This document shows positions 21,891-61,260 of a DNA stretch of 64,000 nt, one piece after another; the stretch's first letter is position 1, and every line of letters starts with the position of its first letter. The notes under the pieces are model-generated. The model was given only the letters and a program-made list of their open reading frames with translations. It had not been told where the DNA came from and searched no databases. Source of the stretch: Mytilus edulis (Eukaryota); contig NC_092354.1 of the NCBI RefSeq assembly GCF_963676685.1, forward strand, positions 10,602,001 to 10,666,000, read 5' to 3'. Made by a program: the position numbers and the translations under genes.

Positions 21891-23532
21891 GAATTTTCAT
21901 ATGAGTCTTTAATGTATAACTCTGTGTAAACATTTTACCACATACATCACATACATATGGCTTTAAACCAGTAATATGTGTTATCTTGTGCCTCTTTAAT
22001 GAATAACACTGACTAAACCTTTTACCACATACATCACACTTAAAAGGTTGTTCCCCTGTGTGTGTTCGTTTGTGTACTTCTAATACTTGACTCTTCCTGA
22101 ATCCTTTACCACACACATCACACAAATGGGGTTTTTCTCCAGTGTGCACTTTCATGTGGTGTATCACGGCATAACTGCTCTCAAACTTTTTGTCACAAAT
22201 ATCACATACATGAGGTTTTTTAACAGCATAACCAGTGTGTGTCCCCATATGTTTCCTTAAGCCATCTTTTCTCCTGAATCCTTTACCACACAAATCACAT
22301 AAATGTACTTTTATATTACCCTTGTGTATTTTCATGTGTATCTGTAAGGAATTCCGACCTATCACTTTATCACAAACATCACATTTGAGGGAGTTACCTT
22401 CAGTGTGTATACTCATGTGTATCTGTAAGCCACGACTCTCACTAAATCCTGAATCACATATACCACATGTGTACGGTTTGTCTCTTACATGTGTTTTCAT
22501 GTGTGTTTTTAAGTCATTATCATGACTAAAATCTGTACCACATAAACCACATTTATAAGGTTTATCACAATTATGCGTTTTCATGTGTGTTTTGAAGTCA
22601 CTATTTTTACTAAATTTTTTACCACATACGTTACAGTCATGAGATTTTTTATCTGTCATGCCTGTGTGTGTTCTCATGTGTCTCTGTAAATTATCAAGGT
22701 TGCTAAAGACTTTACCACATACGTTACCGTTATGCGATAGATTTCCAGTAGGTGTTATTGTGTCGGTCTGTACACTACACTCCTTCTGACTGAACCCATT
22801 ACTATATGGAGAACATTTAAATGGGTTTGTAATCTTATGTGTTCTTCTCATATGTCTCGTCAAGTCCACTCTATGACTAAATTCGTGAGCACAGATACCA
22901 CATTTATAAGGTTTATCACCAGTATGTATTCTCTCATGTATTTGTAATTTATCCATCTGACTAAAACTAACATCACATACATCACATTTATATGATTTAT
23001 CACCAGTATGTATCGTCTCACGTCTTTGTAATTTATCCATCTGACTCAAACTAAAATCACACTTATACTGTTTAGTACATGATAGTTTTTTTATGTGTCT
23101 CTGAAGATGATAATTTCGAGTAAACCCTATACCACAAGTCTCACATTTATAAGGTTTAATACCAATATGATCTCGTATATGTCTATGTAATAAAAAAAAT
23201 GTGCCAAACCCTTTACCACATATACCACATTGAAATGGTTTTTCGCCATCATGTGAACGCATGTGTGACTTTAATAATTTAATTTGATCAAACCCATCAC
23301 CACACACACCACATTTATGAGGTTTGACTTCAGTATCCGACGTCTTCTCAATATTTTCTCCAGTATCTGACGACTGCTCTATATCTTCTCCAGTATCTGA
23401 CGTCTGCTCCATTTCATCTCCAGAATCTGATGTCAGTTCCATAACACCTCTGGTATTTGATGTCTGCTTCATATCATCTCTGGTATCATATGTCTGTTCC
23501 ATATCTTTTCTGGTATCTGACGTCTGTTCCAT
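21859..23532 (-). CDS. Tandem C2H2 zinc-finger protein, 557 aa; about 13 canonical and 4 degenerate fingers, acidic 10-aa N-terminal repeats
   Basis: Intact ORF with CxxC...HxxxH units and TGEKP/TGDKP linkers, and about 7 MEQTSDT repeats. An acceptor (TTTCTTTGATAG) at about 23570 implies an upstream, probably non-coding, exon. Confidence 0.95.
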   Translation of the reverse strand: MEQTSDTRKDMEQTYDTRDDMKQTSNTRGVMELTSDSGDEMEQTSDTGEDIEQSSDTGENIEKTSDTEVKPHKCGVCGDGFDQIKLLKSHMRSHDGEKPFQCGICGKGFGTFFLLHRHIRDHIGIKPYKCETCGIGFTRNYHLQRHIKKLSCTKQYKCDFSLSQMDKLQRRETIHTGDKSYKCDVCDVSFSQMDKLQIHERIHTGDKPYKCGICAHEFSHRVDLTRHMRRTHKITNPFKCSPYSNGFSQKECSVQTDTITPTGNLSHNGNVCGKVFSNLDNLQRHMRTHTGMTDKKSHDCNVCGKKFSKNSDFKTHMKTHNCDKPYKCGLCGTDFSHDNDLKTHMKTHVRDKPYTCGICDSGFSESRGLQIHMSIHTEGNSLKCDVCDKVIGRNSLQIHMKIHKGNIKVHLCDLCGKGFRRKDGLRKHMGTHTGYAVKKPHVCDICDKKFESSYAVIHHMKVHTGEKPHLCDVCGKGFRKSQVLEVHKRTHTGEQPFKCDVCGKRFSQCYSLKRHKITHITGLKPYVCDVCGKMFTQSYTLKTHMKIHSGFASSNGM

Positions 23533-40768: not shown

Positions 40769-42511
40769 ATGTTACACTATAGCCATGGTGGGGAGGAGAG
40801 GACAGGAACAGATACTTTTTCAGATACGGAAAATAAAGAGATTTTAACAGTGATCTCCCCTGAACAACCAACAGACAATTTAGGGATGTTCCATGGCGGA
40901 AAGGATAATAACGAAACAAATATGGGTTCTGATACTGACATCTACACTGAACAACCAACAGACAATTTTGAGATGTTCAACGGCGGACAGGATAATAATG
41001 AAACAAATATGGTTTCTGATACCGAAATTTCCACTGAACAACCAACAAACGATTTCGAGATGTTCCTCTTTGCACAAGACAAGACAGAAACAGATATGGT
41101 TTCTGATACCAAAATCTCCCATAAACATGATGAACAACCTAAAGACACATTAGAGACGTTCCACGACGGACAGGACAAGACAGAAAAAAATATGGTTTCT
41201 GATACTGAAATGTCCCCTGAACAATCCACCGACAAGTTAGATACGATACACCGCGAACAGGACAAGACAGAAACAAATATGTTGTCTGATCCTGAAAAGA
41301 AAAATAAACTGACATTCATCCCTCTTTATCAAACCAGTACAGACCAACTGATTGATAAGGCATATCAGACTTGTACAGACCAACTGATTGATAAGGCATA
41401 TCAGATTTGTACAGACCAACTGATTAATAAGGCATATCAGACTTGTACAGACCAACTCATTGAGAAGGCATATCAGACTTGTACAGACCAACTGATTGAT
41501 AAGGCATATCAGACTTGTACAGACCAAGTGATGGATAAGGCATTTCAGAAAAGTGAGAAAGTTGATACTGGTACTGAATGTGTTAATGAGTACCAGGGTA
41601 GTGTTTGTGGTAAAGGGTGCAAAACTAGTGCATATGGTAAAATGTGCCAATGTAACTTATGTAATAAAGGATGTGATCAGTCTTGCATTGTACATAAAGG
41701 CTACAAACCTTTTAAATGTGGTGTCTGTGACGTGGATTTCACTAGGAAGCAACACATAGAAATGCACATGAGAACACATACTGGTGCTAAACCATACAAA
41801 TGTGATTTATGCGATAATACTTATAGTCGGAGTCATCACTTACGGAATCATATGAGAACACATAACGGTGATAAACCATTCACATGTGATATATGTGATA
41901 AGACATTTGGTGAGCGTTCTCACATGCAGAAACACAGGAAAACACATACAGGCGAAAACCCGAGTAAAATATGTAAATGTGATGTATGTGAAAGGGAATT
42001 TAGTCTGCTCTCTGACTTAAAGAGACACATGAAGACACATACAGGTGATAAACCTCATAAATGTGAGTTATGTGATAAAGCTTTCTGTAGGAAGGAACAC
42101 TTACAATCCCACATGAGAACACATACTGGCGATAAACCTAATCAATGCGAGGAATGTGGTAAAGCTTTCACTAGAAAGGAAGGCTTACGAGTACACATGA
42201 GAACACATAGTGGCGAGAAACCGTTTGCATGTGATATTTGTGGTAGAAGTTTTACTTGTAACAACGACCTGAAAAGACATACACGCAGACATTTAAGACA
42301 TGATGAACATGGTGAAGGACCCTATAAATGTGATATGTGTGATAAAGATTTTATTCGGACATCCAACTTAAAAGTGCATAAAAGAACACATACTGGTGAA
42401 AAAACATTTTTGTGTGAGATATGTGGTCTGACATTTAGCCTCTCAATTTCTTATGCTTCACACGTTACAAAACATAAGGCTAAGAAGACCAAATTACTTA
42501 AATCAAATTAA
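40769..42511 (+). CDS. Tandem C2H2 zinc-finger protein, 580 aa; 9 canonical fingers and two families of N-terminal repeats
   Basis: Intact ORF with HTGDKP/HSGEKP linkers, about 5 EQPTDNFEMF...ETNMVSDTEIS repeats and 6 YQTCTDQLIDKA repeats. Confidence 0.95.
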   Translation: MLHYSHGGEERTGTDTFSDTENKEILTVISPEQPTDNLGMFHGGKDNNETNMGSDTDIYTEQPTDNFEMFNGGQDNNETNMVSDTEISTEQPTNDFEMFLFAQDKTETDMVSDTKISHKHDEQPKDTLETFHDGQDKTEKNMVSDTEMSPEQSTDKLDTIHREQDKTETNMLSDPEKKNKLTFIPLYQTSTDQLIDKAYQTCTDQLIDKAYQICTDQLINKAYQTCTDQLIEKAYQTCTDQLIDKAYQTCTDQVMDKAFQKSEKVDTGTECVNEYQGSVCGKGCKTSAYGKMCQCNLCNKGCDQSCIVHKGYKPFKCGVCDVDFTRKQHIEMHMRTHTGAKPYKCDLCDNTYSRSHHLRNHMRTHNGDKPFTCDICDKTFGERSHMQKHRKTHTGENPSKICKCDVCEREFSLLSDLKRHMKTHTGDKPHKCELCDKAFCRKEHLQSHMRTHTGDKPNQCEECGKAFTRKEGLRVHMRTHSGEKPFACDICGRSFTCNNDLKRHTRRHLRHDEHGEGPYKCDMCDKDFIRTSNLKVHKRTHTGEKTFLCEICGLTFSLSISYASHVTKHKAKKTKLLKSN

Positions 42512-43350: not shown

Positions 43351-45883
43351 TCTATGTGTAGCATTTTTTCTTTTTTTTTCAATATTTTCGAAAGTACAGT
43401 AAGACGAGTTTATGACGTCAAATTGTCTGGTTGTAGCACGTTCACGTTTCCTGTTTGCAGTATTCTAATGGGTTGATTCTGTTTTTTATTCCTGAGTCTT
43501 GGCAATATGGAGATACAACATTTTTTTACTTATTTAAGTGTGGCCAAGGATAGTAGAACTGTTTTACAAGAACAAATAATAATAAAAACATGAAAATAAA
43601 TCAAAATTTCGCTTTCTGAAATTCGTGAGATCTCAATAATTCGATATTTTTAATAACCATTGGTAAATCAGGTGTTGATTTTTTCAGAAGAGAAAGCAGT
43701 ATAATAAGCATGACTAGGAGTTGTGTGAGGGTCAAACATGATTTGGTAAAAAAAAAATCTACAAAATGAGTGTTGCGTTTTTAAAGTCAGTCAGTATATC
43801 TGAAAACATTGAAAGAAAATTTTACACAGGTGCCCATTAGAGCATGTAAATGTTGTGCTATTTCGTCTATTAGTGACAGTTTGTTTCTCCTATGTCCAAA
43901 AACAATCTGTATTTGTCCTAGTATTTGTTATGTTTTATATATCAGTCGTTTGATTAAGGAGAAAGTATGGTAGAACCACTTTTAAAGTACAATAATGTGA
44001 AAAGTCAAATATAGATAAATTAAGCAAATGACAAGGTTTAAAACAAAGAAGCAAAAGATACAAAAGGGACATTCAAAATCATAAGTTATAAATAAATTGA
44101 CAACACCATGGTAAAAAATAAATAAATGAAAAGACATACAAGGATAAACAAAAAATAACGTAGGAAACCACAAAAAAAACCGTGGCTGTTGTCATGTGTT
44201 TTTTAAAGGCATTCGTATGTGGTGATCGATATTTATATTTTGATTGTCCTCGCTAAAACAAAAAACATAATTTTTCATTCGCACACATTTTTATTAGCAA
44301 AATGATCCCCTCGAAAACTTGTTGTTTTTGCCTAGAGCCAATCATTCATCACAATAATGTATTTTTTTTACAAATTGCGTATGTGTAATGTGCAGTGCAT
44401 GGTACATCACCATTAGATGACGCATCTGGTTATAACCACATGTTTTATACTTGACTATAATATTTTGATAAGTTCAAAACGCTGTTAGAAGGTATTGTAT
44501 TTACGTTAAACTGGTCAACATAAAATGTGGAAAGCTGGGATTCTGATACTTTGTGCAATTCAATTTGTACATGTAAGTTTGTTTAGTACTTATATCATTA
44601 TTGGTATATTTATTCTTTTTTTCTATAAAACACCGGATTTTTTATACTGACGCAGAGTAGTTTATTTTATTAATCTGTTTATATATTTTCAGAAGATATG
44701 AGCAACTCGCTAGTGAAACCTATTCACGTCACATGTCCATTGCGATTACATGATTATACAATTAACTTAGTTGTATTTGGTTAAACTTATTGAAATTTTT
44801 GGTCCTCAATGCTCTTCAACTTTGTACTTTATTTGGCCTTTTTAACATTTTTGATTCGAGCGTCACTGATAAGTCTTTTTTTTAGACGAAACGTGCTTCT
44901 GGCGTACATATACAATTTTAATCATGTTATCTACGATAAGTTTATTTATTCAATTGAAATGATACATTTTTATAGAAATCATAGTACATGTATCCATGTT
45001 GGAAAATAAGTCTGACCTCGGAAGAAAACATACATGACGTCAAACTGGTATATGCAAAATACTAGATCAACTATTCTCGGAATCTTTAATCTTTAAGTCA
45101 ACACAGTGCAATTGATGATAAAAAAAAACTCTCAGCAGAAGTCATACAGACAAAAACTACTTTTCAAAAAATGCAGTTGGTGTAATTTTTTTTTTATATT
45201 ATAAATTTTCCTGATTCTTCCTGTTTTTTTCCAACTTCGTTATGGTTTACACAAAAATGTACAATTGAAGTGTACAGTGTATCGTTCGAAATTTGTCGAA
45301 TGACGTCGAATTGTATGCGATAATTATCGGAATCAGTTAATATAAAACGGTAGAATTGTAAGCGATAATTACCGAAATCAGTCCCCTTTGGTATCTTTCG
45401 TCTCTCTTTTTTGATATAAAATGGTAGCAGTTGACAGAAAAAAAAGCATATCCCAAGGCTTTAATCCTTCTTAGAATTAACTGCATTTTTTGCCTTGACG
45501 TTTCGTTTATTACCACGTACATTTAATCATTCATATTTTTTTTATTTCAGCAAACAAAATCAGCAAAACGTGAGAATATATGTATATATATATATATCAA
45601 TATATATCAACGATATTTATAGTTTTCTTACCATTAACCAATCAATTAAGTAAACAATGATGAAAGACAGACAACACCCGAATTATTCTTTGCATATTTT
45701 TTTTCTATCAAATTCATTACCAGCTTGTGATTTTCAATTTGTTTGAAAAGGTCAGGTTATTTTAAAATCTGTCCAGAACATAATTCAATAAGCTACAAAT
45801 GTACGTAATACACATATGAAATGAGAAGGGTGCCAGTTTACAGCTTAGCGAAGCAAGAATCAGTTAGATCCTGTCAATCACTA

Positions 45884-46088
45884 CTGTGGATTCATCATTA
45901 TTCGTTGGAAAAATGTTCGTGGGTTTCGTGGGTACAGGTGAACCACAAATTTAAATCTCAAACGAATTATAAACTTAATATAGGCTTTGTATGCAGATTG
46001 ACTATACCACGAAAATTAATATCCACGAAAATGTATGTATTCCTCAACCTACAAAATTTGATACCTACGAAAATAAATGAATCCACAG
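45884..46088. mobile_element. Tc1/mariner-type MITE (CTGTGG...CCACAG, TA TSD)
   Basis: TIRs and TA flanks; same family as 17649-17857. Confidence 0.8.
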
Positions 46089-47032
46089 TATGGCTTTTAA
46101 GATTTCTAAATATGCAGAGGAACGACAAAAATTGGATTCATACATTCTTTATCTTTTTAAGTAAGGTCATTTTTAAGGTCTGTCTCACTTAACATTATAC
46201 AATTTAATTTCGACAACACAGTCTCTCCTTTAACAAAGAGGTGAATGATGTTTGTTTAGTTAGTTTCTTTTTTATATATTATCTGGATTTGATGCGTAGT
46301 TTAATTTGTAGGCGATTTCCAGAAACAACATGCGCGGAGATGTTCATAAGAGTTTGTGTTTGTAATGTTATTTCAATATCGTTATGTCAAGGTAGATTAC
46401 AGATTAGCATATCAATATGAGTGATATACAATTGATTTATATATGCTGAATATACGATCACTGTAAACAACCGCGGAAAACAGAGAAAAAAAAATATAAT
46501 TGTGATATTACTGTCACTCAAAAATATAAAGATTGGAATGATTGGTTGACAATGGTTAGTAAATGTAGATTTTAAATGCATTTTCTATTTTAGCATGTCC
46601 TATAGTTGCATGCAAGTGTCGATATGGAACTTATCTTGTTATCGTGAGATGTGTCGATGCAAGGCAAGTAAGTGAAGATTTCTATGCATGCAATTACCAA
46701 CATTTGATTTTTTCCTTCAGAACCGCAATATTACCAAGTTTAAACAAATTGAACAAGAAGGGTTTTAGTTGATATCAACTTGAAATAGCAACATTTTCGT
46801 ACATGGCTATTTGATTATTATATTCAATTGCCATATTTCTTTTTTAGCACACAAAAACCAACAAATTAAATGCTATCACCCTTGTGTTGTCCAGACGCTA
46901 AAAAAGAACGATCAACTTTCGACAGTTCTTGCTTAAAAAAAGCCTAGTCATTAAACAATTTACAATAAATATGCTTTTGTAGCACCAAAACATGGTTCCT
47001 TTTTAAAAATTCTTAAAAAAAGCACCTAAATA

Positions 47033-47645
47033 AATAAAAATGGAAATGGGGAATGTATCAAAGAGACAAAAACCCGATCACAGAAAAAACAACAGCAGAA
47101 GATCACAAACAGGTCTTCAATGTAACGAGAAGTTCCCGCACCTGGAGGTGTCCTTCAGCTGGCCCCTATACAACTATATACTAGTTCAGTGATAATGAAC
47201 GTCATACTTATTTCCAAACTGTACACAATAAACTTAAATTAAAATAATACAAGACTAACAAAGACCAGAGACTTGGGACAGGTGCAAAAATGCGGCGGGG
47301 TTAAACATGTTTATGAGATCTCAACCCTATTCCTAAACCTCTAGCCAATGTAGAAAAGTAAATGCAAAACAATACGCACATTTAAAATACAATTCAAGAA
47401 AAGTCCGTGTCTGATGTCAGAAGATGTAACCAAAGAAAATAAACAAAATGACAACAAAACATAAATAGCAACAGACTACTAGAAGTTAACTGACATGCCA
47501 GCTCCAGACTTCAATTAAACTGATTTGAAGATTATGATTTCATCGTATGAATATCAGACACAATCCTACTCTTTATGGGTTTAGTATCATACCATCATAA
47601 CATATATGAGAAGAACATAACCCGTGTCATGCCAACAACTGGTTG
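47033..47645. repeat. Long copy of the SINE-like GGAAATGGGGAATG repeat family
   Basis: Shares sequence with the copies at 28046, 40011 and 4545-4690. Confidence 0.65.
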
Positions 47646-48626
47646 GCCTGACATGTTAAGAACATCTAGGTCAATTTTAATCAGATAGAAATTCATGACA
47701 TAAATATTAAAACACACTGTACATGCTGTATAACAACTTCAAACAAAATAAAAGGCTGATAGGTGATAGAAAATTCCATAATAATTGATTCTATGACAGA
47801 TATTAAATCAACTTAATATTAAGATACATATATAAAAGACGACCATCTATGAATTAGTATCAGCTGAACACATTCGATTAATTTGTTTGACTATAATTTC
47901 AAATTTTGAAACAGATTTAAACTTTCTGCTTATTTGTATACAAAACATGGGTGATTCATTGCATTATTCAAACTGTTTAAACCAAACTTAATATTTTTGT
48001 TGTTTTTAACTTGGAGGAAAGATAATTATTATAGCAAATAAGATATACTGGAATGAAAGAGAAATTTTGCTTTTTGCTTGTACAAGATTTAGAATGAGAA
48101 CAAACTCCCATATTTCCATTTTCCATTTTATATTCAAAGTTGAGCCTATATCATTTGTATAAATTTACAGGACTAGCATGACCCCCAGTTTGTGCAATAA
48201 CATATGCATTTTGACAAGTGTGTGATGACTTTAATGCACACATTTGTCCATCATAGATTTTAATCACGAGAAGAATGAATAAAGAAAATAGTACTCAAGT
48301 TGTGCAAATATGAATAAGAAGATGTGGTACGAGTGCAAATAAGACAATCCAAATCACAATGTATAAAAGGTTAATAATTATAGATTAAAGTACCACTTCA
48401 ACGTGGGACATTGGCTCTCACCGAACAGCAATCTATGTTTCTTTATAAAGGGTGCAAAAATAACTGCAATGACCCCAAAATAACTTGTGCATTAACCATG
48501 TCAATATGTATTTTTTTGTTTACATGTATCCCTCACACATCATACATGTAATTTTGTATGTACCCCTCATACATCATACATGTACTTTTGTATGAGTCTC
48601 TCATACATCATACATGTTCTTTTCAG

Positions 48627-48746
48627 TATGTCCAGGTAATGTGAATTCGTTATCAATTACCTGTGGCGACGGTATACAGAGATGCCCTGGACATTACACA
48701 TGTATAACACATCCAGGAAGCAAAAAAGGGATGTGCTGTCCTATTG
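48627..48746 (+). CDS. Lustrin cysteine-rich (WR1-like) domain exon of gene A
   Basis: CP...C...CP.HY.C...G.CCP six-Cys pattern; 120-nt phase 1-1 exon. Confidence 0.75.
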
Positions 48747-51173
48747 GTAGGTATCAATCAAATTTTTGAATTGACAGCAATTAACCAAAGTACCAAACAA
48801 TCTGACATTGTAAAATTGACTTTCTAAATTCACTCATTCTGAAATCATATCTTTTTTGAGCTATTTCAACTGCCAAATAATCTGGAATTTTGTACGATCT
48901 ATTTATAATTCAGTAGTTTCAGCTGATTCAGACCAGTAAAGCCTAAATTTGAGGGTCTATAATATTAGAGACAGGTCGAGACCAGTTCAGACTACACGCG
49001 GATCATGAAGTACTGGATAAGACTTATTAAGTAAATTCGAGATCAAAGTCGAGTACAGTTAAGTAGAGTGAAGTACTGTCGAGATAATGTCGAAACCAGT
49101 CGAGTATTATCTGTGCTCGATTTTTTTCTGAATGAGCACAAAATGTGGTCTTTGCAAACCCTGAGCAGTTTGTAGATACCTTCAATGTGGATTGCTTCAG
49201 AAAATAGCTTTAACTGTGGTAACTCTCTTGAATACAATAGAATCTCTTTTGGTATACTATGATGAGTTTGATAATTGTTCAGGAGCTATAAGCTAGCTGA
49301 AGGACGCTTCCGGGTGCGGGAGTTTCACGTTGCATTGTATACCTATTGGTGAGCTTCTGCTGTTGTGTGTTCTATGGTCTAGTTGCTGTCTCTTTGATAC
49401 ATTCCCCGTTTCCATCCTTAATTTTATTGTTTTCTGAAAATATATCTATCAATACTAACAAACACTAATCCATATTTTACATTTTAGGAAAACCTTATAT
49501 CCCACTGAGTGGTTGATGCCCTAGAGAAAATGGTTACCATCAATAATATGTAAATCCTACTCATTGCTGTAGACAACAACAAATTACATTTTAAATTTTT
49601 CTAATATCTAGATATTCATAAAAACTTCATGAATGTTGATGTTCTTAATTTTTTCAGTCCATAGTCATCCGTTCGGCTTTCAACAATGTAAAAAAACTTA
49701 AACCGCATTGTAGGCTGTAAAAGACCCCAATATGAAAAAAAATATGAAATCTTCACCAATCTAATATTGACTCTAAAAAAGGATTTGTCTCCTTTTGTAG
49801 TTTAGTATTAATCAAACAGTTGTACATTAAATATTGTAAGAACAAATTGCATCTCCTATTTTAATACATTCGTCATTGTGAGCAGTGTTGAAGTATACAT
49901 TTACCTTAAAATATGGTGGTTTGTGTTCTCTAGCATGTCCATTTTTCAATGCAAAATACTGGATGAATGACTAGGTTGAATCAAGTAAAATTTATACTTA
50001 TATGCAGTATAAGCAGAATTTTAAATATCCAACCATAAACAAAATGTAATAGTATACGTTTCGACAACTGATGTTGTCTATAATGTCAAACGACAAATAT
50101 TCCAAGTATATTAAGAGAATAAAACAATGACCAATGAATTTAATGACAAACATGTATTCAGAAAGGCCATTGCTATTTGGTTAGACAGTATATACTGATT
50201 TGAGAACAATATCGCCTTTCAGCAGACCGCTTGTTTGAGTTCTTACACGCATAGAGAGCTGGAAACTCTTCAATTAAAAAGATCGAATTTTACCTCTCGA
50301 CTTTTTACAATTAATGGTTTTGTCTTTGACCAACTTTAAAAAAGAAACCGGCGTCTTTATTTTGCATAGAGAGACGAAAGATCCGGTGACAATATCTGTA
50401 AACTACATTCTGCTCTTTGAGTCCAAAATGCAAACGCCACGTATTTTCGTTTGTATTTCTTAACCACTAAAACTCGTTTATGAGATATGTATGCTATTGT
50501 TTTATCCGATTCATATCTTATGCATATGTAAGAACAGATTTAAAAGATAATGATATAAGTAAAGGTATGTGTTATTTATCATAATAATTGCTATATATCC
50601 TTCAACATAATTCACTTCAGGTAAGTTTGACAAATAAAATATAAATACGTAACATTTTCTTATTTGATTTCATTTGTATACAGGACATGATAGTAATAAT
50701 ATATAGTTGTTGACAATAATGTTGACAACGTGGCTTATGCAGATGTTACTAGATCCGTGTTTACCACTGTTATTAAGGAGACGTCGTCAATAACATGAAT
50801 TGTTTTTTTCCGACATTTCTAAGATTGATAACAAAAATTAAAAGAAACAGACTCAATATTGAATTAAAGTATATCACTTGTAAAAGATAAAAGAGTCGAA
50901 TACTCATATAAAACATAGCGTATAGTAATACTAATAGTAGATTATTATACCTTCTGTAAACATGTCCTTTTATAGTAAAGTTGCTCTATCTTTGCATAGT
51001 GTTTTAAAGAAATATATAGCGTTAACTGCACTATGTGAAAATAGTATGCCTTGCTGTTGTAATAGACTATTGATTTCCATGTCAATCATTGTCAATTTCA
51101 AGTGCAAAGTCAGAGCTTAGTTGTTTTGACAGACAAGGGGGTAGGATTGATAAGCATAACAATTAAAAAACTA

Positions 51174-51587
51174 CACAGCTAATTTTGCATAGGTACTATT
51201 ACTGTACTAAAATTATGTAGTACTGGAAATTTGCTTTTGATATTTAGTACTTTACTCTAAAATTATTGAAATATTTAGGTACTTGTATTTTACAGTACTT
51301 GATTTGTACTAAAAATTTTGGTACAGAAATAATACAATATTCCATGTTTGAAATTCATAATTTTAAGAGATTTGAAATAGAAAAACTTTCAAAATGCTGA
51401 AAGTGTAACGGTCGTAACCAAAATTCTGTAGTACCTAAATCTCAGGTACAAATTAAGTACTGTAAAATACAGGTACCTAAATATTACAATAATTTTAAAG
51501 CACCAAAATAGTACTGAATTTTAAAAGTAAATTTCCGGTACTACATATTTTTAGTACAGAAATAGTACCTATGCAAAAGTAGCTGTG
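51174..51587. mobile_element. Foldback MITE with CACAGC...GCTGTG termini and TA TSD
   Basis: TA|CACAGCTAATTTTGCATAGGTACTATT ... AATAGTACCTATGCAAAAGTAGCTGTG|TA with long inverted arms. Confidence 0.85.
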
Positions 51588-52576
51588 TATTACAATTGAA
51601 CAATCAGGGAAAATAGTAAAACTATATGCATTTAAATTTTTCTGACATTTTAAGAGACTTTAAAATACTGTAGTTTCTGTTTGAACGTTTTTTTATCTGT
51701 GTTTACTTCTGCTTAATGTTGTTGGAGCCAAAAATTGTTTAATACTTTAGAAGGCATTTGTTACAGATAAATAGATATGATGCGATATCATTGTATATTG
51801 TAAATTATTGACTTTAATATGAGTATTGTTTTTTTACTGCAACTAAAATTAATAAAATGATAGCTTTCTTGTCAAGTTTATTTTTATCCCTTAATGGACC
51901 TCCGATTGTGGAAAAATTATTCCATGATGAAATTGACAGTTTACATTTAAATACACTGCTGTCACTTTTCAAAATAGTGAACAGTCAGTATAATAATGAT
52001 ATTAATGTTGAATTTTACATTGACTATCCCCTTAGGGTCCTGAACTATTTTCTCTGACCCTGGCAACTATTTTCGCATAGACAATGTTAAACACAACATT
52101 ATTATATAAATATCCCTAACGTTTATGCTATACTATTGTAAGCGTCATTCTATTCCCAATAATGAGCATGATGAGAGACTATTACAAAATTATCATAAAC
52201 AATATTTTACATAATTTTTAAACTATTTGAAAAAACAAAGCAAGATTACAAGATTAGATTACAAGAAAATGAATTTAACATTTTGTATGTAGACGACTTG
52301 TTGTTTTATGATCAAAAAGTCAAATGCAGTCGTTTATGCAACGTAAAATATTATGTTATGACGCTTGTCGTTTGCTGTATGAACTACTTAAAATGTCCGT
52401 TTTTATTTAAATATTTGCCAAAATTTATATTCGCGTTATTTTTTTACTCGCGAAAGTTGCAAAGATAATCTGTAGCAAAAACTATTTGATTTACAATACT
52501 CGTTTGTTTTACACGACTCGTTGCTGTATGAACTACTTATCTTTTTCAGACGACTCGGTGTTTGTTATATGAACTA

Positions 52577-52800
52577 CTGTAAACCAACTTATTTTAGCGG
52601 TTACTTTATTTCGCGTTTTACCATTTTTGATTATTAGCACTTTTTGCAGCGATGTGTTTCGCGATTTCCTAATTGTTTCATGGTGTTAAGTAAGACAATA
52701 TTCGATTATTGTGCATATTCGCTACAATTAATATTCGCGTGAGTTTTCTACTTGCTTAAGCTGCGAAGATAATCTCTAGCGAAAATAAGTTGGTTTACAG
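52577..52800. mobile_element. Tc1/mariner-type MITE (CTGTAAACCAACTTATTTT TIR, TA TSD)
   Basis: TA|CTGTAAACCAACTTATTTT ... AAAATAAGTTGGTTTACAG|TA. Confidence 0.85.
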
Positions 52801-52819
52801 TATTCGTTTGTTTTACACA

Positions 52820-55110
52820 ACTCGTTGCTGTATGAACTACGAACTCATTATAGACGACTCGTTACTGTATGGACTTCGTACTCATTGTAGACGACTCGTT
52901 ACTGTATGGACTACGTACTCATTGTAGACGACTCGTTGCTGTATGAACTACGTACTCATTGTAGACGACACGTTGCTGTATGAACTACGTACTCATTGTA
53001 GACGACTCGTTGCTGTATGGACTACGTACTCATTGTAGACGACTCGTTGCTGTATGGACTACGTACTCATTGTAGACGACTCGTTGCTGTATGAACTACG
53101 TACTCATTGTAGACGACTCGTTGCTGTATGAACTTCGTACTCATTGTAGTTGCTGTATAAACTACGTACTCATTGTAGACGACTCGTTGCTGTATGGACT
53201 ACATACTCATTGTAGACGACTCGTTGCTGTATGGACTACGTACTCATTGTAGACGAATCGTTGCTGTATGAACTACGTACTCATTGTAGACGACTCGTTA
53301 CTGTATGGACTACATACTCATTGTAGACGACTCGTTGCTGTATGAACTTCGTACTCATTGTAGACGACTCGTTGCTGTATGAACTACGTACTCATTGTAG
53401 ACGACTCGTTGCTGTATGAACTTCATACTGATTGTAGACGACTCGTTGCTGTATGAACTACGTACTCATTGTAGACGACTCGTTGCTGTATGAACTACGT
53501 ACTCATTGTAGACGACTCGTTGCTGTATGAACTACGTACTCATTGTAGACGACTCGTTGCTGTATGAACTACGTACTCATTGTAGACGACTCGTTGCTGT
53601 ATGGACTACGTACTTATTGTAGACGACTAGTTGCTGTATGGACTACGTACTCATTGTAGACGATTCGTTGCTGTATGGACTTCGTACTCATTGTAGACGA
53701 CTCGTTGCTGTATGGACTACGTACTCATTGTAGACGACTCGTTGCTGTATGGACTACGTACTCATTGTAGACGACTCGTTGCTGTATGAACTTCGTATTC
53801 ATTGTAGACGACTCGTTGCTGTATGAACTTCGTACTCATTGTAGTTGCTGTATGAACTTCGTACACATTGTAGACGACTCGTTGCTATATGGACTACGTA
53901 CTCATTGTAGACGACTCGTTGCTGTATGGACTACGTACTCATTGTAGACGATTCGTTGCTGTATGGACTACGTACTCATTGTAGACGACTTGTTGCTGTA
54001 TGGACTACATACTCATTGTAGACGACTCGTTGCTGTATGAACTACGTACTCATTGTAGACGACTCGTTGCTGTATGAACTTCGTACTCATTGTAGTTGCT
54101 GTATGAACTTCGTACTCATTGTAGACGACTCGTTGCTGTATGGACTACGTATTCATTGTAGACGACTCGTTGCTGTATGAACTACGTACTCATTGTAGAC
54201 GACTCGTTGCTGTATGAACTACGTACTCATTGTAGACGACTCGTTGCTGTATGAACTACGTACTCATTGTAGACGACTCGTTGCTGTATGAACTTCGTAC
54301 TCATTGTAGTTTCTGTATGAACTTCGTACACATTGTAGACGACTCGTTGCTGTATGGACTACGTACTCATTGTAGACGACTCGTTGCTGTATGGACTACG
54401 TACTCATTGTAGACGACTCGTTGCTGTATGGACTACGTACTCATTGTAGACGACTTGTTGCTGTATGGACTACATACTCATTGTAGACGACTCGTTGCTG
54501 TATGAACTACGTACTCATTGTAGACGACTCGTTGCTGTATGAACTTTGGACTCATTGTAGTTGCTGTATGAACTTCGTACTCATTGTAGACGACTCGTTG
54601 CTGTATGGACTACGTATTCATTGTAGACGACTCGTTGCTGTATGGAATTCGTACTCATTGTAGACGACTCGTTGCTGTATGAACTACGTACTCATTGTAG
54701 ACGACTCGTTGCTGTATGGAATACGTACTCATTGTAGACGACTCGTTGCTGTATGAACTTCGTACTCATTGTAGACGTCTCGTTGCTGTATGAACTTTGT
54801 ACTCATTGTAGTTGCTGTATGAACTTGTACTCATTGTAGACGACTCGTTGCTGTATGGACTACGTATCATTGTAGACGACTCGTTGCTGTATGGACTACG
54901 TACTCATTGTAGACGACTCGTTGCTGTATGGACTACGTACTCATTGTAGACGACTCGTTGCTGTATAAACTACGTACTCATTGTAGACGACTCGTTGCTG
55001 TATGGACTACATACTCATTGTAGACGACTCGTTGCTGTAGGGACTACGTACTCATTGTAGGTGACTTGTTGCTGTATGGACTACATACTCATTGTAGACG
55101 ACTCATTGTT
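52820..55110. repeat. 37-bp minisatellite, about 60 copies, with 29-bp deletion variants
   Basis: GACTCGTTGCTGTATGGACTACGTACTCATTGTAGAC head-to-tail with no spacers. Confidence 0.97.
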
Positions 55111-55484
55111 GTTTAAACTCATCATTCATTTGAGACTACTCGTTGTTGTTTTAACTTATAAATCGCTTAGACGACTCGTGGTTTATAAACTTTTGTTTCA
55201 TTTTGCAAAATTTGTTGTTAAATGAAATACTAATTCATTTATAATTGAATCTGATACCTGATTCGACTAAAGTTTTTTCGACCCTTTATTCATTTCAAAA
55301 TGTGAGTCAAGTTGCATTGTAATAATTTAACATACACTTTTGTTTTTTCAATGTGTTTCCTGAAAGCTTAACATTTATCACATGCACATACTTTTAGGAC
55401 ATCTTAAACTGTTTCCTTAAACAAAGTATAACTTTAAAATGTTCTTGACGGATCATCCATTTACATTTACCTGTTCGTACTAAA

Positions 55485-58400
55485 ATGTGGCAAGTTGGAA
55501 TTTTGATCCTTTTTATAGCTAGTTATGCACAGGTTAGTTTATATATTTATTGAAATACCAGTTTGAGTTGTTCTGTATAAAACCCGACTTGATTATTACA
55601 AAAGAAATTATATGTGTGAGACTTGCTAAATTCTTCTGAGACTTAATAGCCATTTTCCCACCTATTGTATATTGCTACGGTCAATCACCAATATATGTTT
55701 TTTCTATTTCAGCAAGCAAGATCCACAACACGTAAGAATACATCTTAACGATTATTTTAGTGTATTTGCAATTCTTTTTAGAAGACAATAATTAAGATGA
55801 AAGATACATTCGTATAATAATTTGCAACCAATTTTTATTCATATGAAATTTATTGCAAGCTGATAGTTTTCATTTTTTTTTGGTTTGGAATTGATGCTCA
55901 AAGGGTAGTTCAATTTGTCGACGATTTGCAGAAACAGCATGCGCTTATGTGTTCGATAGAGTTTACTTTTAATGTTATTTCAATACCCTCATGAACAGGT
56001 AGAATGCATACCGATAAAAGAGGTTGTTTAAAATACAAATGAGTGATATCAACTTGATACGTATTGGCTGTATAAAAGATTACTGCACAGCGTAAAATAA
56101 CAAAAATATATTTTTTTATATTACTGTGACGAACAATATATATAAATATTTTTTGTTTGCAAATGTCACAATAGGTAGTTGCTGTTTAAGTGAATATTGG
56201 TTGTATATGTTTTTCTATTTTAGCATGTCTTAAAATGGCATGTTTTTGTCCACTAGGAAGCTCTTACATTTATTACGTAAATGGCTGTCGAAGGTGTACA
56301 TGCAAAGAAAGTAAGTTGCAATGAAATTTAATTAGACAATAACAGTGGAAAAAAGTATTTGTAAAAATAAAAAATTCTGTACAAAAAAAGCATATCAATG
56401 TTCTAAGTTTGAAAAAAGAAGGTGTTTCAGAGGAAATTAATTTGAAGTAGTCAAATTTACAATATAAAAAAGAAGATATGGTATGATTGCCAATGAGACA
56501 ACTGTCCACAAGCATGAATTCGATACTCGTATACAGTGGCCGCGTCTCTTGTTGTTTGCAAACATATACATATAATTTTATCATCCTTGTGTTATCTGGA
56601 AACTAAATGATGTAACGATCGCTTTTCGACAGGTTTGTAGACTTGAGACTTGATAAAAGGGCCAGTCATTTAGCACTAATAAATATTATAAGATCATAAC
56701 CTAATGAACAGCATCTAGGTCAATTTTTATAGCTTCAAAAAGCATGGCATGATACTCGCTCGGACTCACTGTAAACAATCTGAATCCAAAATAAAATTAA
56801 AAAAACTTATAAGTGATAAAAAATTACACAACGATTGTTTCAATAAAGGCAACAGTAGTATACTGTTGTTAGCAATACATAAATCGAGTAAGAAAAAGCA
56901 AATCCGGGTAACACAATAAAACTGATGGAAACACATCAAATATAAGAGGAGAACTGCTACACAACAAAAACACACCACTAAAATATAACACACAAACTAA
57001 CGAACTATAATATTAAAATGGCATTTTTCCTGACTTGGTACAGGACATTTTAAGAAAAAAATGGTGGGTTAAACCTTGTTCTTAGGTTGGTCAAATAATT
57101 TAAATCATAGTGTATTATGCTACGTCAGAAAGCTATTGTGATCAGTTCGATAAAGAAAAGTTTACGTATTTAGATTTAACTGTAAAACACTCATAAAATA
57201 TTTAATGTTTCTGTTATAATCTGAATGATACTACAGGAGCAGTATTTCAATATATGACGTCATCATTAATTTCAGATTCGTGTCCACAATATGCATCACC
57301 TGAACCAGGGCTCTGTACCGGTCAGCCTAATACATTTTATGTAGGAAAAGTGAAATGCTATGGACCACCTAAAATAATTCCATGCAGTAAAGGTAACGCA
57401 ATTTTTTTTTACATGTCCAATGCACTTTTATCATTGCTAAACTTAGAAATCTTACTTTGGTATTTAATGATTTTGGAGTCATGGTATACCAATTGTATGT
57501 TAATATGTTTAGGCATTATATTATAAATTCTAAAAGTTAATTTAGTTAACGAACAAATGCGTAGGTCATCGCATGATCTCCAAAAGAAGCGCAAATGAGC
57601 AGGTGAACACAGCCATAATGTGTATTACCAAATAATACCATTTTCTTGTTATATGTCTCGTCTGCCAATTTGTTCTAGTAGTAAATTTGAAGTCATCCCT
57701 TTTGACTGACATTATCATGAGTTGGTTTACTGTTATGATATGATTATGTTAAAATGAACTACATATATGTGCCAATAGACGAAACAAGAAAAGCCTCTTT
57801 TTCCCGATTCTGATATCACCGGAACACGTTGCACGATTTGAATATTCTTTGCATACCTAATAATTAATATATTACAACATGTACAAATTGTAATTCTATT
57901 TCTCGAGATATATGTCACAAAATTTACATCTTTAACTTTGTTATAGCATATTAATTGTAATCGTTCCAATTACTTCCTGTTTTTTTTCTTCTATACGATA
58001 TCCGACAATCTGAAAAAAAAAACATATTGGTAGCTGTTATAGAAAATGTGCGCTAAACACATATTAAATCATTCTTTGCTAGTTTGTTTCCATTGGATTT
58101 CTGGAATTGTATTTACATATTTGAACAACAGAGCTCTACTTTGTCACTTACCAGTTTCGGTTTATACGCAAAGCTACAACATTCAATAAAAATAATCGTC
58201 CAGATTAGATGTAACAATATTAGGATTTAAATGTTAATGTAAAGTTACATAAATCCCATAAAATGAAGCATTTATCTTGTCGTTTATAAGTTTATTTTGG
58301 AAGAAAAGAGGGAAACACGTACTAGATTAACAACGCACTGGGTTAAAAAGAAAAAACGATCGACAGAAAAAAAGACTAAATAACACGGACTTAACTAAAA

Positions 58401-58721
58401 GTGGGGATGATATCAGGTGCTTCTAAATGTTTAGTTTAAGATATTCTGGTTAAAAAAATAACAGAATGAAATTTTCGACGAAAGTGAAATACACGAGAGA
58501 TAACACAATTTCACATCAATATTTCGTAGGCTTAGAATCTTTGATTAGTTTATTTATTTTCATTTTACCAGGTCAAATATCCGTGAAAGAGACCAGAATG
58601 AAAAAAGAGAAATGCAAGCGAGATAACATAATTTCATATCAATATATCATAACCATTGTATATTTGATTAGTTTGTGTTACTTTTCCAGGTTCTACACCT
58701 AAACCAACAGTGGCTCAATAA
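55485..58721 (+). CDS. Small secreted cysteine-rich protein gene B, 100 aa (antistasin-like 6-Cys + 4-Cys domain); exons 55485-55532, 55713-55731, 56224-56310, 57276-57392, 58690-58721
   Basis: MWQVGILILFIASYAQ|QARSTT|PCLKMACFCPLGSSYIYYVNGCRRCTCKE|NSCPQYASPEPGLCTGQPNTFYVGKVKCYGPPKIIPCSK|GSTPKPTVAQ*. All junctions are GT-AG (phases 0,1,1,1), giving a 303-nt open frame. Exon 1 and 2 sizes are identical to paralog A. Confidence 0.8.
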
Positions 58722-59152: not shown

Positions 59153-61260
59153 GTTCAAGGTTGTTGTTTTCGTGCGTTGTCTCATTTTGAAGTATCAAGT
59201 CTTTTTGATTGTTTTCTTGTTTGTTTTAATATGTTGTAAAAGGGGAGTGTTGGGCGCCACCAAACATGTTGAAATCCTTCACATTCCATGTCCTTGTCTG
59301 CAAGTAAGGGGTTGCCGTTTAATGCTGTATATCATTTTGGTTTGTTGTTTTGGAAAAGAACGACGAAAGATAACAATGGGATATTCAAACTCTTGGATCG
59401 AAGATAAACTGACACCATTTTGTAATGTCGGAACACTTTATGTTTTTTTTGCCAGATGGTATTTTATCATTGTCGAAGGCCGTGCTTTGATCTGTTGTTG
59501 CTTAAATCTATATAGTTATCACAGGTACAATGAGTATAACGTAATACGCCAGACGCACGTTTCGTCTACAGAAGTTATTACAGAAAGGTGATGATGTAAG
59601 ATGTGTTTGCCAATTGAGTAATGTGTGAAATTTGCAGGTCATAAACGTTCTCAAACCTTGATATGCTTGAGTATTCATCAAGATTGGTGTATTTTTTCTT
59701 CATTTTTCTAATGAACAAACAAGAAGTTATGCCCTGAATACAGCAAATGTCTCATCTAGTTATGTATTAATTAGGTATAAAGATGTCGTTGTTTTGAACA
59801 AAATTAGTTCTTTAATTTTAAAACCGAATTTTTCATTTACATGAACATTTGCTATATGAGTACAAAACCCTTTTATCAACAGAATCCGTGATACATTTTG
59901 AAAAGCATTCATTACAACATGTCCTTCAATTTAAATATTCGTCAACTACCTCTATCCAATGTTATGTTGATGCACGAACATTTCGATTTTGTTTGCAATC
60001 TTCTAAATATTATAACACCTAGCATTTTGCCTAGTGAGTTAGTGTTTTACAGAGCACATTCCACGTTCGAAGTAAGCATTATGGCACCTTGAATTTAATA
60101 CAGTGTATGTTAAAAAACATATAATATAACTTTTTCAATTTTCCAAACCATAAACCAGATCATCTTGAAACACAAATAACTGTTCCTGACTTGGTAAATA
60201 AATTTTAAGAAAGACAAAATGGTTGGTTTAACCTGGTATTAATGCTAGCCATTCCTCTCGGTATGACATTGTTATATGAAAATGTAAAAAATACATGACA
60301 ATGATAATACAATAGGAATAAAACACAAACAAACGCGAGTTCCCTCGGCACAAAAATATCAAAATAAAATATATAATATGTTTTTGTTTTATTTAGTCCG
60401 TATATATACAAGGAAACAGATTGCAGTTTTAAATATTACTAGTAGCTGTTGCTTGATTTTCATCTTTGAATTGTCACTTGGACTTTTTCGTGAAAAGATA
60501 CACGCGTTCCTAGTGTGCAATGATATTTGAAATTTGATAACATGTTAAAATGCATATATAGACATGATAGAAGTTAGTACCTAGCGTAGGATTGTATACC
60601 AAAAAGCTGAATTGAACTAGACATATACACTATAACGCTAGCGAATGATAGAAAATAGAAAAAGATAGCGTTATTTAATTGGTTGAAATTTAGGTTATCA
60701 TAATTCGATATTATTATTGAAAAACTGTGTTTTACGGAAGTTTGGATTGTCCTAAGTTTTCATTCTGTAACTTTCGTTGGAAGAACAATACGACTTCCAA
60801 TGATTACGAGAAACTGTTATGTAATAAAAATGACAATAGTTTCCACAACAAAATTTTAGAAAATAAAAACCACTTCATTTTGATTGCGTCATCACATTAA
60901 TAATACACGTGTATGCAATTAGTAACCGCAATGTGAAATTTAACACGTCGCTTCATTTGATTCTGTCGATGAAGTTTACAGTAGAAGTTCATTTAAACTG
61001 TAGGAAGTTTTTGTTATAAATATGAATTCGAAATATCATCCCTTCTCAAATCGCATATATTATTTTTGAAAATTGAAGGTATCCAGATTAAAAATTATTC
61101 ATCATTGTAAAAGAATTCCTGGCAACTGAAGGCATATCTAAGGCTCATAACAAAATACACAAGCAGACTGTATAAGTGTTGTGTAACTCAACGGACCGCT
61201 TGAACATACACACAGCTTTTCGAGAGAGGGAAAACATTAATAATGTTGAATTGGAACAAA

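What the first reader, a model, noticed from the sequence alone, without database searches (positions are those of the whole stretch)
44525..58721. Pair of microexon-built secreted cysteine-rich genes with a swapped domain cassette
Seen: two tandem genes about 11 kb apart, largely absent from the ORF track. Both have a 48-nt signal exon (MWKAGILIL / MWQVGILIL), a 19-nt microexon and an antistasin-like exon with an identical acceptor context (TTTTCTATTTTAG|CATGTC). Each then has a phase 1-1 fourth exon, and these are not homologous: a six-Cys Lustrin/WR1-type domain in A and a four-Cys Pro-rich module in B. Both end in a short Pro-rich tail. Inference: a family of about 100-aa secreted disulfide proteins diversified by exon shuffling, as a constant head with an interchangeable effector domain. 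Candidate roles are immune effector, protease inhibitor, or shell/byssus matrix protein. The architecture matches no mussel defensin, mytilin, myticin or CRP-I pattern I recognise.
Basis: partly seen in the sequence, partly recalled or inferred. Interest (0 to 1): 0.8.

Follow-up and report, generated by a model that had tools for sequence, protein, structure and literature searches.

The report
Two small mussel cysteine-rich secreted-protein genes
Two neighbouring blue-mussel genes for roughly 100-residue secreted, disulfide-rich proteins share a start region but carry unrelated end modules borrowed from a nearby family of protease-inhibitor-like genes, a clean but fairly ordinary case of exon shuffling.

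Summary
Both genes are real. Gene B (55485-58721) matches, exon for exon, a 100-aa RefSeq protein of Mytilus edulis (XP_071139374.1, "uncharacterized protein"), and it has a near-identical M. galloprovincialis counterpart. Gene A (44525-49516) has no public protein. It is nevertheless transcribed: spliced contigs in two runs from two studies join its five exons.

The transcripts use the GTAAGT donor at 46667. They also carry 10 extra letters in exon 3, which the window allele lacks, so the window allele is frameshifted, with a stop after 52 codons.

The two exon 4s are unrelated. A's is Lustrin_cystein-like. B's is a 4-Cys module with no Pfam or PDB match, found only in Mytilus.

A/B homology ends inside intron 3, so the whole 3' half differs, not just exon 4. 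Both module types recur as phase 1-1 exons after antistasin exons in large WAP/Kunitz/antistasin/Lustrin genes 0.2-0.4 Mb away. The 48-nt signal exon recurs at seven further sites.

Verdict: an exon-shuffled small branch of a known kind of family. Function is untested.

The parts
44310..44524 (+). Gene A promoter-proximal region and 5' UTR
   Evidence: 44310-44583 is 72.7% identical over 282 nt to another family head (L050) and 68% identical to three more. The X1 contig starts at 44448.
44525..44572 (+). Gene A exon 1, 48 nt, hydrophobic leader (MWKAGILILCAIQFVH)
   Evidence: Laid in X1 record 1, ending exactly at 44572.
45551..45569 (+). Gene A exon 2, a 19-nt microexon that takes the frame from phase 0 to phase 1
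   Evidence: AG/GT borders. There is a 19-letter gap between exons 1 and 3 in both contigs, and the bin depths (1.31 and 0.62) fit 19 nt at depths 13.4 and 6.3.
46594..46667 (+). Gene A exon 3, a diverged antistasin-like module. It is 74 nt in the window and 84 nt in the transcripts; the window allele is frameshifted.
   Evidence: Joint 46667>48627 with GT..AG ends. 10 letters put in behind 46643, and T>A at 46636 and 46637, in both X1 and X2. Masked 6-Cys pattern, and stop after codon 52 for the window allele. The alternative frame of the window's 3' part keeps CxC.
48627..48746 (+). Gene A exon 4, 120 nt, phase 1-1, six-Cys Lustrin_cystein-like module
   Evidence: Pfam PF14625 E=5.1e-5, 23.9 bits, below the 27-bit cutoff. 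Aligns with 8 paralogous modules, one of which passes the cutoff. Laid in both contigs.
49488..49578 (+). Gene A exon 5: 9 codons plus TGA (stop ends at 49516), then 3' UTR to at least 49578
   Evidence: Joint 48745>49487 (cut +1) with GT..AG ends; the X1 piece reaches 49578.
55485..55532 (+). Gene B exon 1, 48 nt leader (MWQVGILILFIASYAQ)
   Evidence: Residues 1-16 of P0009.
55713..55731 (+). Gene B exon 2, 19-nt microexon (QARSTT plus 1 nt)
   Evidence: Residues 17-22 of P0009.
56224..56310 (+). Gene B exon 3, 87 nt, phase 1-1, six-Cys diverged antistasin-like module
   Evidence: hhalign against 11 genuine antistasin modules: probability 80%, E=1.4e-5 over 18 columns. No Pfam hit.
57276..57392 (+). 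Gene B exon 4, 117 nt, phase 1-1, four-Cys Pro-rich module seen only in Mytilus
   Evidence: No Pfam, PDB-sequence or fold match.
58690..58721 (+). Gene B exon 5, tail GSTPKPTVAQ plus TAA
   Evidence: The C-terminus of P0009.
47658..47794 (+). Last collinear block of A/B homology, inside intron 3 (matches 56707-56844). The 3' halves beyond it are unrelated.
   Evidence: blastn of the A locus against the B locus.

Best explanation
Shown:
- These are two tandem five-exon genes of Mytilus edulis.
- Each encodes a protein of about 100 residues with this layout: 16-residue hydrophobic leader; six residues from a 19-nt microexon that moves the frame from phase 0 to phase 1; a diverged six-Cys antistasin-like module; a second Cys module; a short Pro-containing tail.

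Inferred origin:
- The 5' half (proximal promoter, exons 1-3 and part of intron 3) was duplicated.
- Recombination inside intron 3 then joined it to two different 3' halves.
- Each 3' half carries a phase 1-1 domain exon of a type that sits right after antistasin exons in the large WAP/Kunitz/antistasin/Lustrin genes of the same chromosome arm. A carries a Lustrin_cystein-type module; B carries a Mytilus-only four-Cys module.

Shown for gene A:
- It is polymorphic. The assembled allele lacks 10 nt in exon 3 and would terminate after 52 codons.
- The transcribed alleles seen in two studies are in frame, giving 99 codons.

Inferred function:
- The products are secreted, disulfide-locked serine-protease-inhibitor-like proteins.
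- The residue after the second Cys, which is the P1 position in hirustasin, is Lys in A and Phe in B.
For: Gene B:
- It equals P0009 (XP_071139374.1), which sits on a contig of 84,322,751 nt, the same length as G000:C11.
- The same exon joins appear in two M. galloprovincialis annotations (P0002, P0008).

Gene A:
- Spliced contigs in X1 (461 nt, depth 13.4) and X2 (330 nt, depth 6.3), from two studies, have GT..AG joints at 46667>48627 and 48745>49487.
- Both contigs carry the same 10-nt insertion.

Homology and modules:
- Homology blocks end at 47794/56844.
- The two exon 4s are unrelated.
- Paralogous modules pass Pfam thresholds: Antistasin 37-38 bits, Lustrin_cystein 30, Kunitz 75, WAP 43.
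- They are flanked by AG..GT in phase 1.
- 6 of 8 four-Cys modules have an antistasin module 0.5-1.4 kb upstream.
- Antistasin-then-Lustrin pairs recur.

Shared head:
- The signal-exon pattern has 9 genomic matches against 0 for the reversed control.
- 6 of the 7 non-window sites show an open 45-48-nt leader followed by a GTAAG donor.
- The proximal promoter is conserved.

Reactive loop:
- In hirustasin, P2 is Cys29, P1 is Arg and P3' is Cys33 (passages of PMC3014083).
Against: - Pfam finds no Antistasin domain in exon 3 of either gene or in P0009.
- The loop between Cys2 and Cys3 is 1 residue here against 3 in hirustasin and antistasin, so canonical inhibition may not hold.
- A's exon 4 scores below the Lustrin_cystein cutoff (23.9 against 27 bits).
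- Two raw RNA-seq runs of the same species label (X18, X21) gave no reads on A's exons.
- X1 and X2 are only guessed to be RNA, and each gives a single contig.
- Two of the four substitutions in A's exon 3 were not listed.
- The direction of transfer (large genes to small genes, or the reverse) is not resolved.
- Tissue of expression, secretion and activity are all untested.
Confidence: 0.7

Rival explanations
1. One reading: both window genes are intact genes of about 100 codons that differ only by a swapped exon 4 cassette, and gene A splices from a GTGAAG donor after 46671.
For: With that donor the window allele gives an open frame of 97 codons. Exon 4 is phase 1-1 in both genes.
Against: Both spliced contigs use the donor at 46667, and no joint from 46671 was reported. 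Exon 5 and the 3' flanks are also unrelated, and homology stops in intron 3.
Confidence: 0.1
2. Gene A is a dying pseudogene at the species level, and the transcripts are residual expression.
For: The reference allele is frameshifted. No public protein was found. There is no coverage in two raw RNA runs.
Against: The transcribed allele in two independent studies is in frame over 99 codons, with all six Cys positions of exon 3 in the listed letters. Exon 4 keeps all six Cys.
Confidence: 0.15
3. The 10-nt gap in exon 3 of A is an assembly error, not a natural allele.
Against: The gap is not in a homopolymer. Adjacent substitutions (TT>AA at 46636-7, plus others) point to a diverged haplotype. 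Mussels are known for high structural polymorphism (PMC7653742, search listing and abstract only).
Confidence: 0.15
4. The products are structural matrix (byssus or shell) proteins or antimicrobial peptides rather than protease inhibitors.
For: The Lustrin_cystein domain is named after a nacre matrix protein. An antistasin-like protein was found in the Perna viridis byssus proteome (PMC6508894, passages). The reactive-site loop is shortened.
Against: No tissue or proteome data were obtained here. All the paralogous modules belong to inhibitor families.
Confidence: 0.3

Closest known systems
Antistasin-type serine-protease inhibitors (hirustasin, antistasin, bdellastasin, guamerin; Pfam PF02822)
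   Same: Six-Cys pattern C-x4-C-x-C-..G..-GC-x2-C-x-C. The neighbouring paralogous modules hit these PDB chains at E about 1e-5 and pass the Pfam cutoff. B's exon 3 aligns to those modules with hhalign probability 80%.
   Different: No Pfam hit for A or B themselves. There is one residue between Cys2 and Cys3 against three in the solved inhibitors. The leech 10-Cys unit places its 4-Cys sub-domain before the 6-Cys part (my reading of the chains shown), whereas B has an unrelated 4-Cys module after it.
Lustrin_cystein (PF14625) repeats of lustrin A and related mollusc proteins
   Same: A's exon 4 has the C..C..CP..Y.C..CC pattern and a sub-threshold Pfam hit. Close paralogues pass the threshold.
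   Different: It is a single copy in a roughly 100-aa protein, not a long multi-repeat matrix protein. It scores below the cutoff.
Large multi-domain WAP/Kunitz/antistasin/Lustrin genes of the same Mytilus chromosome (C11 10.34-10.44 and 10.96-10.98 Mb; C9 79.02-79.07 Mb), e.g. P0003, a WAP domain-containing protein
   Same: Same module types, same phase 1-1 exon design. A near-identical 48-nt signal exon occurs in this region at C11:10377172 and is followed by WAP-type exons.
   Different: A and B carry only two modules each, and both have the 19-nt adaptor microexon. That microexon was seen at only one further locus.
Byssal antistasin-like protein of Perna viridis (PMC6508894)
   Same: A secreted mussel protein with 6-Cys/2-Gly antistasin-type repeats (passages).
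   Different: That protein is 236 aa with tandem repeats.
Micro-exon genes (MEGs) of schistosomes (recalled, not from a call)
   Same: Secreted products and a very short internal exon.
   Different: MEGs are built mostly from many symmetric microexons. Here there is one asymmetric 19-nt exon acting as a phase adaptor.

Membership tests
Antistasin family (PF02822) | Pfam HMM hit above the gathering score (21.2 bits) | tested here: not met
   0 families at E<=10 for both exon 3 peptides. 0 families for the whole B protein P0009. Paralogous modules score 37-38 bits.
Antistasin family (PF02822) | Six-Cys, two-Gly spacing pattern | tested here: met
   B. A's transcribed allele: masked pattern. The window allele of A keeps only 4 Cys in frame.
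Antistasin family (PF02822) | Profile similarity to genuine antistasin modules | tested here: inconclusive
   hhalign probability 80%, E=1.4e-5, covering only 18 of 27 columns.
Antistasin family (PF02822) | Three-residue reactive loop (P1, P1', P2') between Cys2 and Cys3 | tested here: not met
   One residue in A (K) and in B (F), against CRIRC in hirustasin and CRVHC in antistasin. P positions come from passages of PMC3014083.
Antistasin family (PF02822) | Inhibition of a serine protease | not testable with these tools
   Needs a recombinant protein assay.
Lustrin_cystein (PF14625) | Pfam hit above the gathering score (27 bits) | tested here: not met
   23.9 bits, E=5.1e-5. Paralogue L022:7165-7275 scores 30 bits.
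Lustrin_cystein (PF14625) | Six Cys with the CP..Y.C...CC motif, alignable to members | tested here: met
   Alignment A4: 8 invariant columns, including all 6 Cys.
Schistosome-type micro-exon genes | Coding sequence made mostly of many symmetric microexons | tested here: not met
   One 19-nt exon only, and its length is not a multiple of 3. The definition of the family is recalled.
Mussel AMP families (defensin, mytilin, myticin, CRP-I) | Family-specific Cys arrays and precursor organisation | not tested
   No library of these families was available. Pfam gave no such hit.

The most novel reading that the evidence does not exclude
A Mytilus-specific expression cassette, made of a conserved proximal promoter, a 48-nt signal exon and a 19-nt phase-adaptor microexon, repeatedly captures single Cys-rich modules out of giant multi-domain inhibitor genes and releases them as free mini-proteins. 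Three architectures are seen: antistasin-like plus Lustrin; antistasin-like plus a new 4-Cys hairpin domain; and, in M. galloprovincialis P0004, the 4-Cys domain alone. Null and intact alleles segregate as they do for mussel immune effectors. The 4-Cys module would be a new lineage-restricted domain.
Probability: 0.3. Interest if true: 0.6.

Novelty: new variant of a known kind. Interest (0 to 1): 0.4.

Why it matters
This is a compact, well-resolved example of exon shuffling caught in the act.
- The breakpoint is still visible inside an intron.
- The likely donor-type exons lie on the same chromosome arm.
- A microexon solves the phase mismatch between the leader and the phase-1 domain exons.

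It also brings out three specific findings:
- An undescribed 4-Cys module, found only in Mytilus among 1.84 billion representative proteins.
- An expressed paralogue with no counterpart in the public protein collections searched here.
- A frameshift allele of that paralogue in the reference assembly.

For mussel biology these are candidate small protease inhibitors or matrix or immune peptides. Exon shuffling in such families is textbook, so the general surprise is modest.

Tried and rejected
- The search for homologous proteins with A's exon 4 found no candidates, as a 41-aa piece or as the 57-aa stop-to-stop frame. With P0009 it found only P0009's own cluster.
- The genome search 'own' with B's exon 3 (protein and DNA) and with exon 1 DNA found only the query itself and missed gene A. 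That search is too insensitive to count family members; an IUPAC pattern worked better.
- The strict 19-nt microexon scan found none at six other heads. One homologue turned up by blastn and alignment, but only retro-element-like ORFs follow it.
- Structure of the 4-Cys module: the model has pLDDT 84.4 and is a beta-hairpin. It has no Foldseek match at E<=0.001, a best VIA Z of 2.4, no PDB sequence hit and no usable Atlas hit.
- The whole-protein model of P0009 was too poor to search (pLDDT 59.7).
- Papers: no paper holds the accessions. None holds microexon + cysteine-rich + mussel. The antistasin/Mytilus/Lustrin, antistasin/WAP/Kunitz/bivalve and antistasin/byssus searches gave only general shell, byssus and tissue studies. 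Supplementary tables of those papers, which were closed, may list these proteins.
- Of the 7 hits I set aside three (P0001, P0006, P0007). They match in 7-19 short partial stretches and come from repeat proteins of ENA metagenomes and Pelagomonas.
- The two earlier-scan notes concern other parts of the window and were not used.

Full report
WHAT IS THERE

The window is G000:C11:10602001-10666000 of a 1.37-Gb assembly. A public Mytilus edulis RefSeq protein, P0009 (XP_071139374.1), sits on a contig of 84,322,751 nt, the same length as C11. The genome is therefore the M. edulis reference. On the + strand lie two five-exon genes.

Gene A:
- exon 1: 44525-44572 (48 nt)
- exon 2: 45551-45569 (19 nt)
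- exon 3: 46594-46667 (74 nt)
- exon 4: 48627-48746 (120 nt)
- exon 5: 49488-49516, ending in the stop

Gene B:
- exon 1: 55485-55532 (48 nt)
- exon 2: 55713-55731 (19 nt)
- exon 3: 56224-56310 (87 nt)
- exon 4: 57276-57392 (117 nt)
- exon 5: 58690-58721

All borders are AG/GT. The exon 1 pattern and the 19-nt acceptor context before exon 3 each occur exactly twice in the window, against 0.00 and 0.09 expected from shuffles.

ARE THEY GENES?

Gene B:
- A profile of eight four-Cys modules was searched against 1,835,955,588 representative proteins. It returned 7 hits at E<=1e-3.
- One hit, P0002 (100 aa, M. galloprovincialis XP_076080224.1), has cluster mates P0009 (M. edulis) and P0008 (a partial 2020 M. 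galloprovincialis model).
- P0009 is identical to the window's five translated exons laid end to end. Three annotations therefore make the same joins.
- I did not lay reads on B. The single read-laying run, limited to 6,000 letters, went to A.

Gene A:
- No protein sharing three 5-residue words with its exon 4 exists in the 5.8-billion-cluster collection, within length ranges of about 22-72 aa and 31-100 aa.
- Reads settle the question. In X1 (record 1, 461 nt, depth 13.4) and X2 (record 7, 330 nt, depth 6.3) a single contig covers 44448-44572, 46594-46667, 48627-48745 and 49487-49578. These runs share a species label and come from two studies.
- The joints are 46667>48627 and 48745>49487 (cut +1), both with GT..AG ends.
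- Exactly 19 unlaid letters lie between exons 1 and 3, and the bin depths fit the microexon.
- These runs are only guessed to be RNA, but intron-less GT..AG joints are what cDNA gives.
- Two raw RNA-seq runs (X18, X21) gave no reads on the exons, only on intronic repeats. Expression is therefore restricted.

THE CORRECTION FOR GENE A

The contigs use 46667. In both contigs exon 3 carries 10 letters put in behind 46643, plus T>A at 46636 and 46637, which makes it 84 nt.

Frame arithmetic, done in a script that printed no changed letters:
- Window allele with the observed donor: stop after 52 codons.
- Transcribed allele: 99 codons. Its exon 3 has the masked pattern xCxxxxCxCxxGxxxxxxxGCxxCxCxx, one residue shorter than B's.

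I had predicted this from the window alone. A's exon 3 is 13 nt shorter than B's, and the 3' part of the window's exon read in the other frame keeps ...C....CxCKA before the GTAAGT donor.

Two of the four substitutions in that piece were not listed, so the peptide is not fully known. Whether the deletion is a natural allele or an assembly slip is open, because no DNA run was laid.

WHAT THE MODULES ARE

- A's exon 4 gives a sub-threshold Lustrin_cystein hit (E=5.1e-5, 23.9 bits against a 27-bit cutoff). It aligns with eight paralogous modules with all six Cys invariant.
- Neither exon 3, nor P0009 as a whole, hits any Pfam family.
- B's exon 3 aligns to 11 genuine antistasin modules of the same genome with hhalign probability 80%, E=1.4e-5, over 18 columns.
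- B's exon 4 has no Pfam hit, no PDB sequence match, no Foldseek match at E<=0.001 and a best VIA Z of 2.4. The model is a beta-hairpin behind a Pro-rich arm, with pLDDT 84.4.
- Of the 7 hits, the four with one full-length stretch (P0002-P0005) are all Mytilus. The other three match in many short stretches and I treat them as spurious.
- The two exon 4s are unrelated: BLASTP finds nothing at E<=100, and profile against profile gives probability 0.2%.

WHERE THE MODULES COME FROM

In the own genome:
- A's exon 4 has 12 matches at E<=10. Six of them, at E<0.1, lie at C11 10.359-10.439 Mb.
- B's exon 4 has 8 matches, at C11 10.351, 10.961 and 10.976 Mb and at C9 79.03-79.07 Mb.

The fetched regions are arrays of Cys-rich exons. 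Samples of these pass Pfam thresholds as Antistasin, Lustrin_cystein, Kunitz and WAP.

A regex scan of the window plus ten loci found 8 four-Cys, 9 Lustrin-type and 12 antistasin modules. Nearly all are flanked by AG and GT in phase 1. Six of the 8 four-Cys modules have an antistasin module 0.5-1.4 kb upstream, and antistasin-then-Lustrin pairs recur. Both A's and B's exon 3 plus exon 4 arrangements therefore exist as two-exon units in the large genes.

THE SHARED HEAD

- A degenerate exon 1 pattern has 9 genomic matches against 0 for the reversed control.
- Six of the 7 non-window sites show an open 45-48-nt leader (MW/ML..ILIL..H) followed by a GTAAG donor. One is decayed, with an in-frame TGA.
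- Several are followed by WAP-type exons.
- A's region 44310-44583 is 68-73% identical to four of these heads, which includes about 200 nt upstream of the ATG.
- A homologous 19-nt microexon lies at C11:10,837,904.

EXTENT OF THE A/B DUPLICATION

Collinear blocks of 63-67% identity cover:
- 44468-44585
- 45463-45744
- 46261-46673
- 46855-46972
- 47658-47794

The B coordinates run from 55428 to 56844. There are no collinear matches after that. The breakpoint is therefore in intron 3, about 0.8 kb (A) and 0.4 kb (B) before exon 4. Exon 5 and the 3' flank differ too.

A THIRD ARCHITECTURE

P0004 (VDI41084.1, M. galloprovincialis, 64 aa) is leader, then microexon, then the four-Cys module, then a tail. 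The gap relative to B is exactly the 29 codons of exon 3. Its best match in this assembly is B's exon 4 at 64% identity, so it has no close counterpart here. It is an unverified 2020 gene model.

HOW IT LIKELY WORKS

- Shown: the gene structures, the transcription of A, the module identities and the homology limits.
- Inferred: the leader is a signal peptide, judged from its hydrophobic core. No predictor was available, and AF2 gives only a low-confidence helix at residues 3-20.
- Inferred: the microexon's role is to convert the phase-0 leader exon to the phase-1 register that every domain exon needs.
- Inferred function: serine-protease-inhibitor-like.
  - In hirustasin, P2 is Cys29, P1 is Arg, P1' is Ile and P3' is Cys33 (passages of PMC3014083).
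  - These align to Cys2-x3-Cys3 of the mussel modules.
  - A and B have a single residue there, Lys and Phe respectively. That would fit trypsin-like and chymotrypsin-like targets.
  - The loop is two residues shorter, however, so canonical binding is doubtful.
  - Matrix or immune roles are not excluded.

KNOWN OR NEW

- Gene B is already in RefSeq, but only as "uncharacterized protein".
- No paper in the searchable library holds its accessions.
- My searches found no description of this architecture. Closed supplements could hide it.
- Exon shuffling of phase 1-1 Cys-rich modules is textbook knowledge (recalled).
- I therefore rate this a new variant of a known kind, with modest general interest.

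Four specific findings stand out:
- the intron-3 breakpoint;
- the Mytilus-only four-Cys module;
- the expressed paralogue that has no public protein model;
- its frameshifted reference allele.

Noticed in passing
window 52820-55156: A 37-bp satellite of 64.5 copies with 90% matches, lying between genes A and B. It raises GC to 0.37-0.38 in those bins.
   Followed up: partly
window 44761-44948 (intron 1 of gene A): A short repeat of about 190 nt, present in at least 20 copies at 69-83% identity across the 17 fetched loci. It has very high depth in all four runs laid, so it is probably a MITE-like element.
   Followed up: partly
window 46976-47711 (intron 3 of gene A): A repeat-derived stretch with word depth in the thousands and many loose ends in RNA runs. 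It looks like a transposon fragment and is not part of the gene.
   Followed up: no
L048:561-608 and L053:904-922 (G000:C11:10830061 and 10837904): A third locus with a family leader exon and, 7.8 kb further on, a homologous 19-nt microexon (PSRSKT-type, resembling P0004). Only retro-element-like ORFs with a zinc knuckle follow within 9 kb.
   Followed up: partly
L037/L040 (G000:C2:22048841 and 22049542, minus strand): Two leader exons 700 nt apart. One is intact (MWKAGILILCLIYYTH followed by GTAAGT). The other is decayed, with an in-frame TGA and no GT donor.
   Followed up: no
L021-L023 (G000:C11:10342001-10372000): A 30-kb array of more than 20 Cys-rich exons (WAP, Kunitz, antistasin, Lustrin_cystein and one four-Cys module), probably one or a few giant multi-domain inhibitor-like genes.
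   Followed up: partly
P0004 (VDI41084.1, M. galloprovincialis): A 64-aa model with the family leader, the microexon and the four-Cys module but no antistasin exon. Its best match in this M. edulis assembly is only 64% identical. It may be a presence/absence gene or a mis-annotation.
   Followed up: partly
window 15711-16325 (-), 21859-23532 (-), 40769-42511 (+): C2H2 zinc-finger ORFs flank the pair upstream. A 181-nt-period array of zinc-finger-like units lies at about 20595-21845. An earlier scan note, s1-837063, covers it.
   Followed up: no
window 8737-9033, 11717-11998, 61243-61725 (+): Open frames that look like a Sushi/CCP domain, a C-type lectin domain and a PAN/Apple-like domain. This is judged by eye only and was not tested against Pfam.
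   Followed up: no
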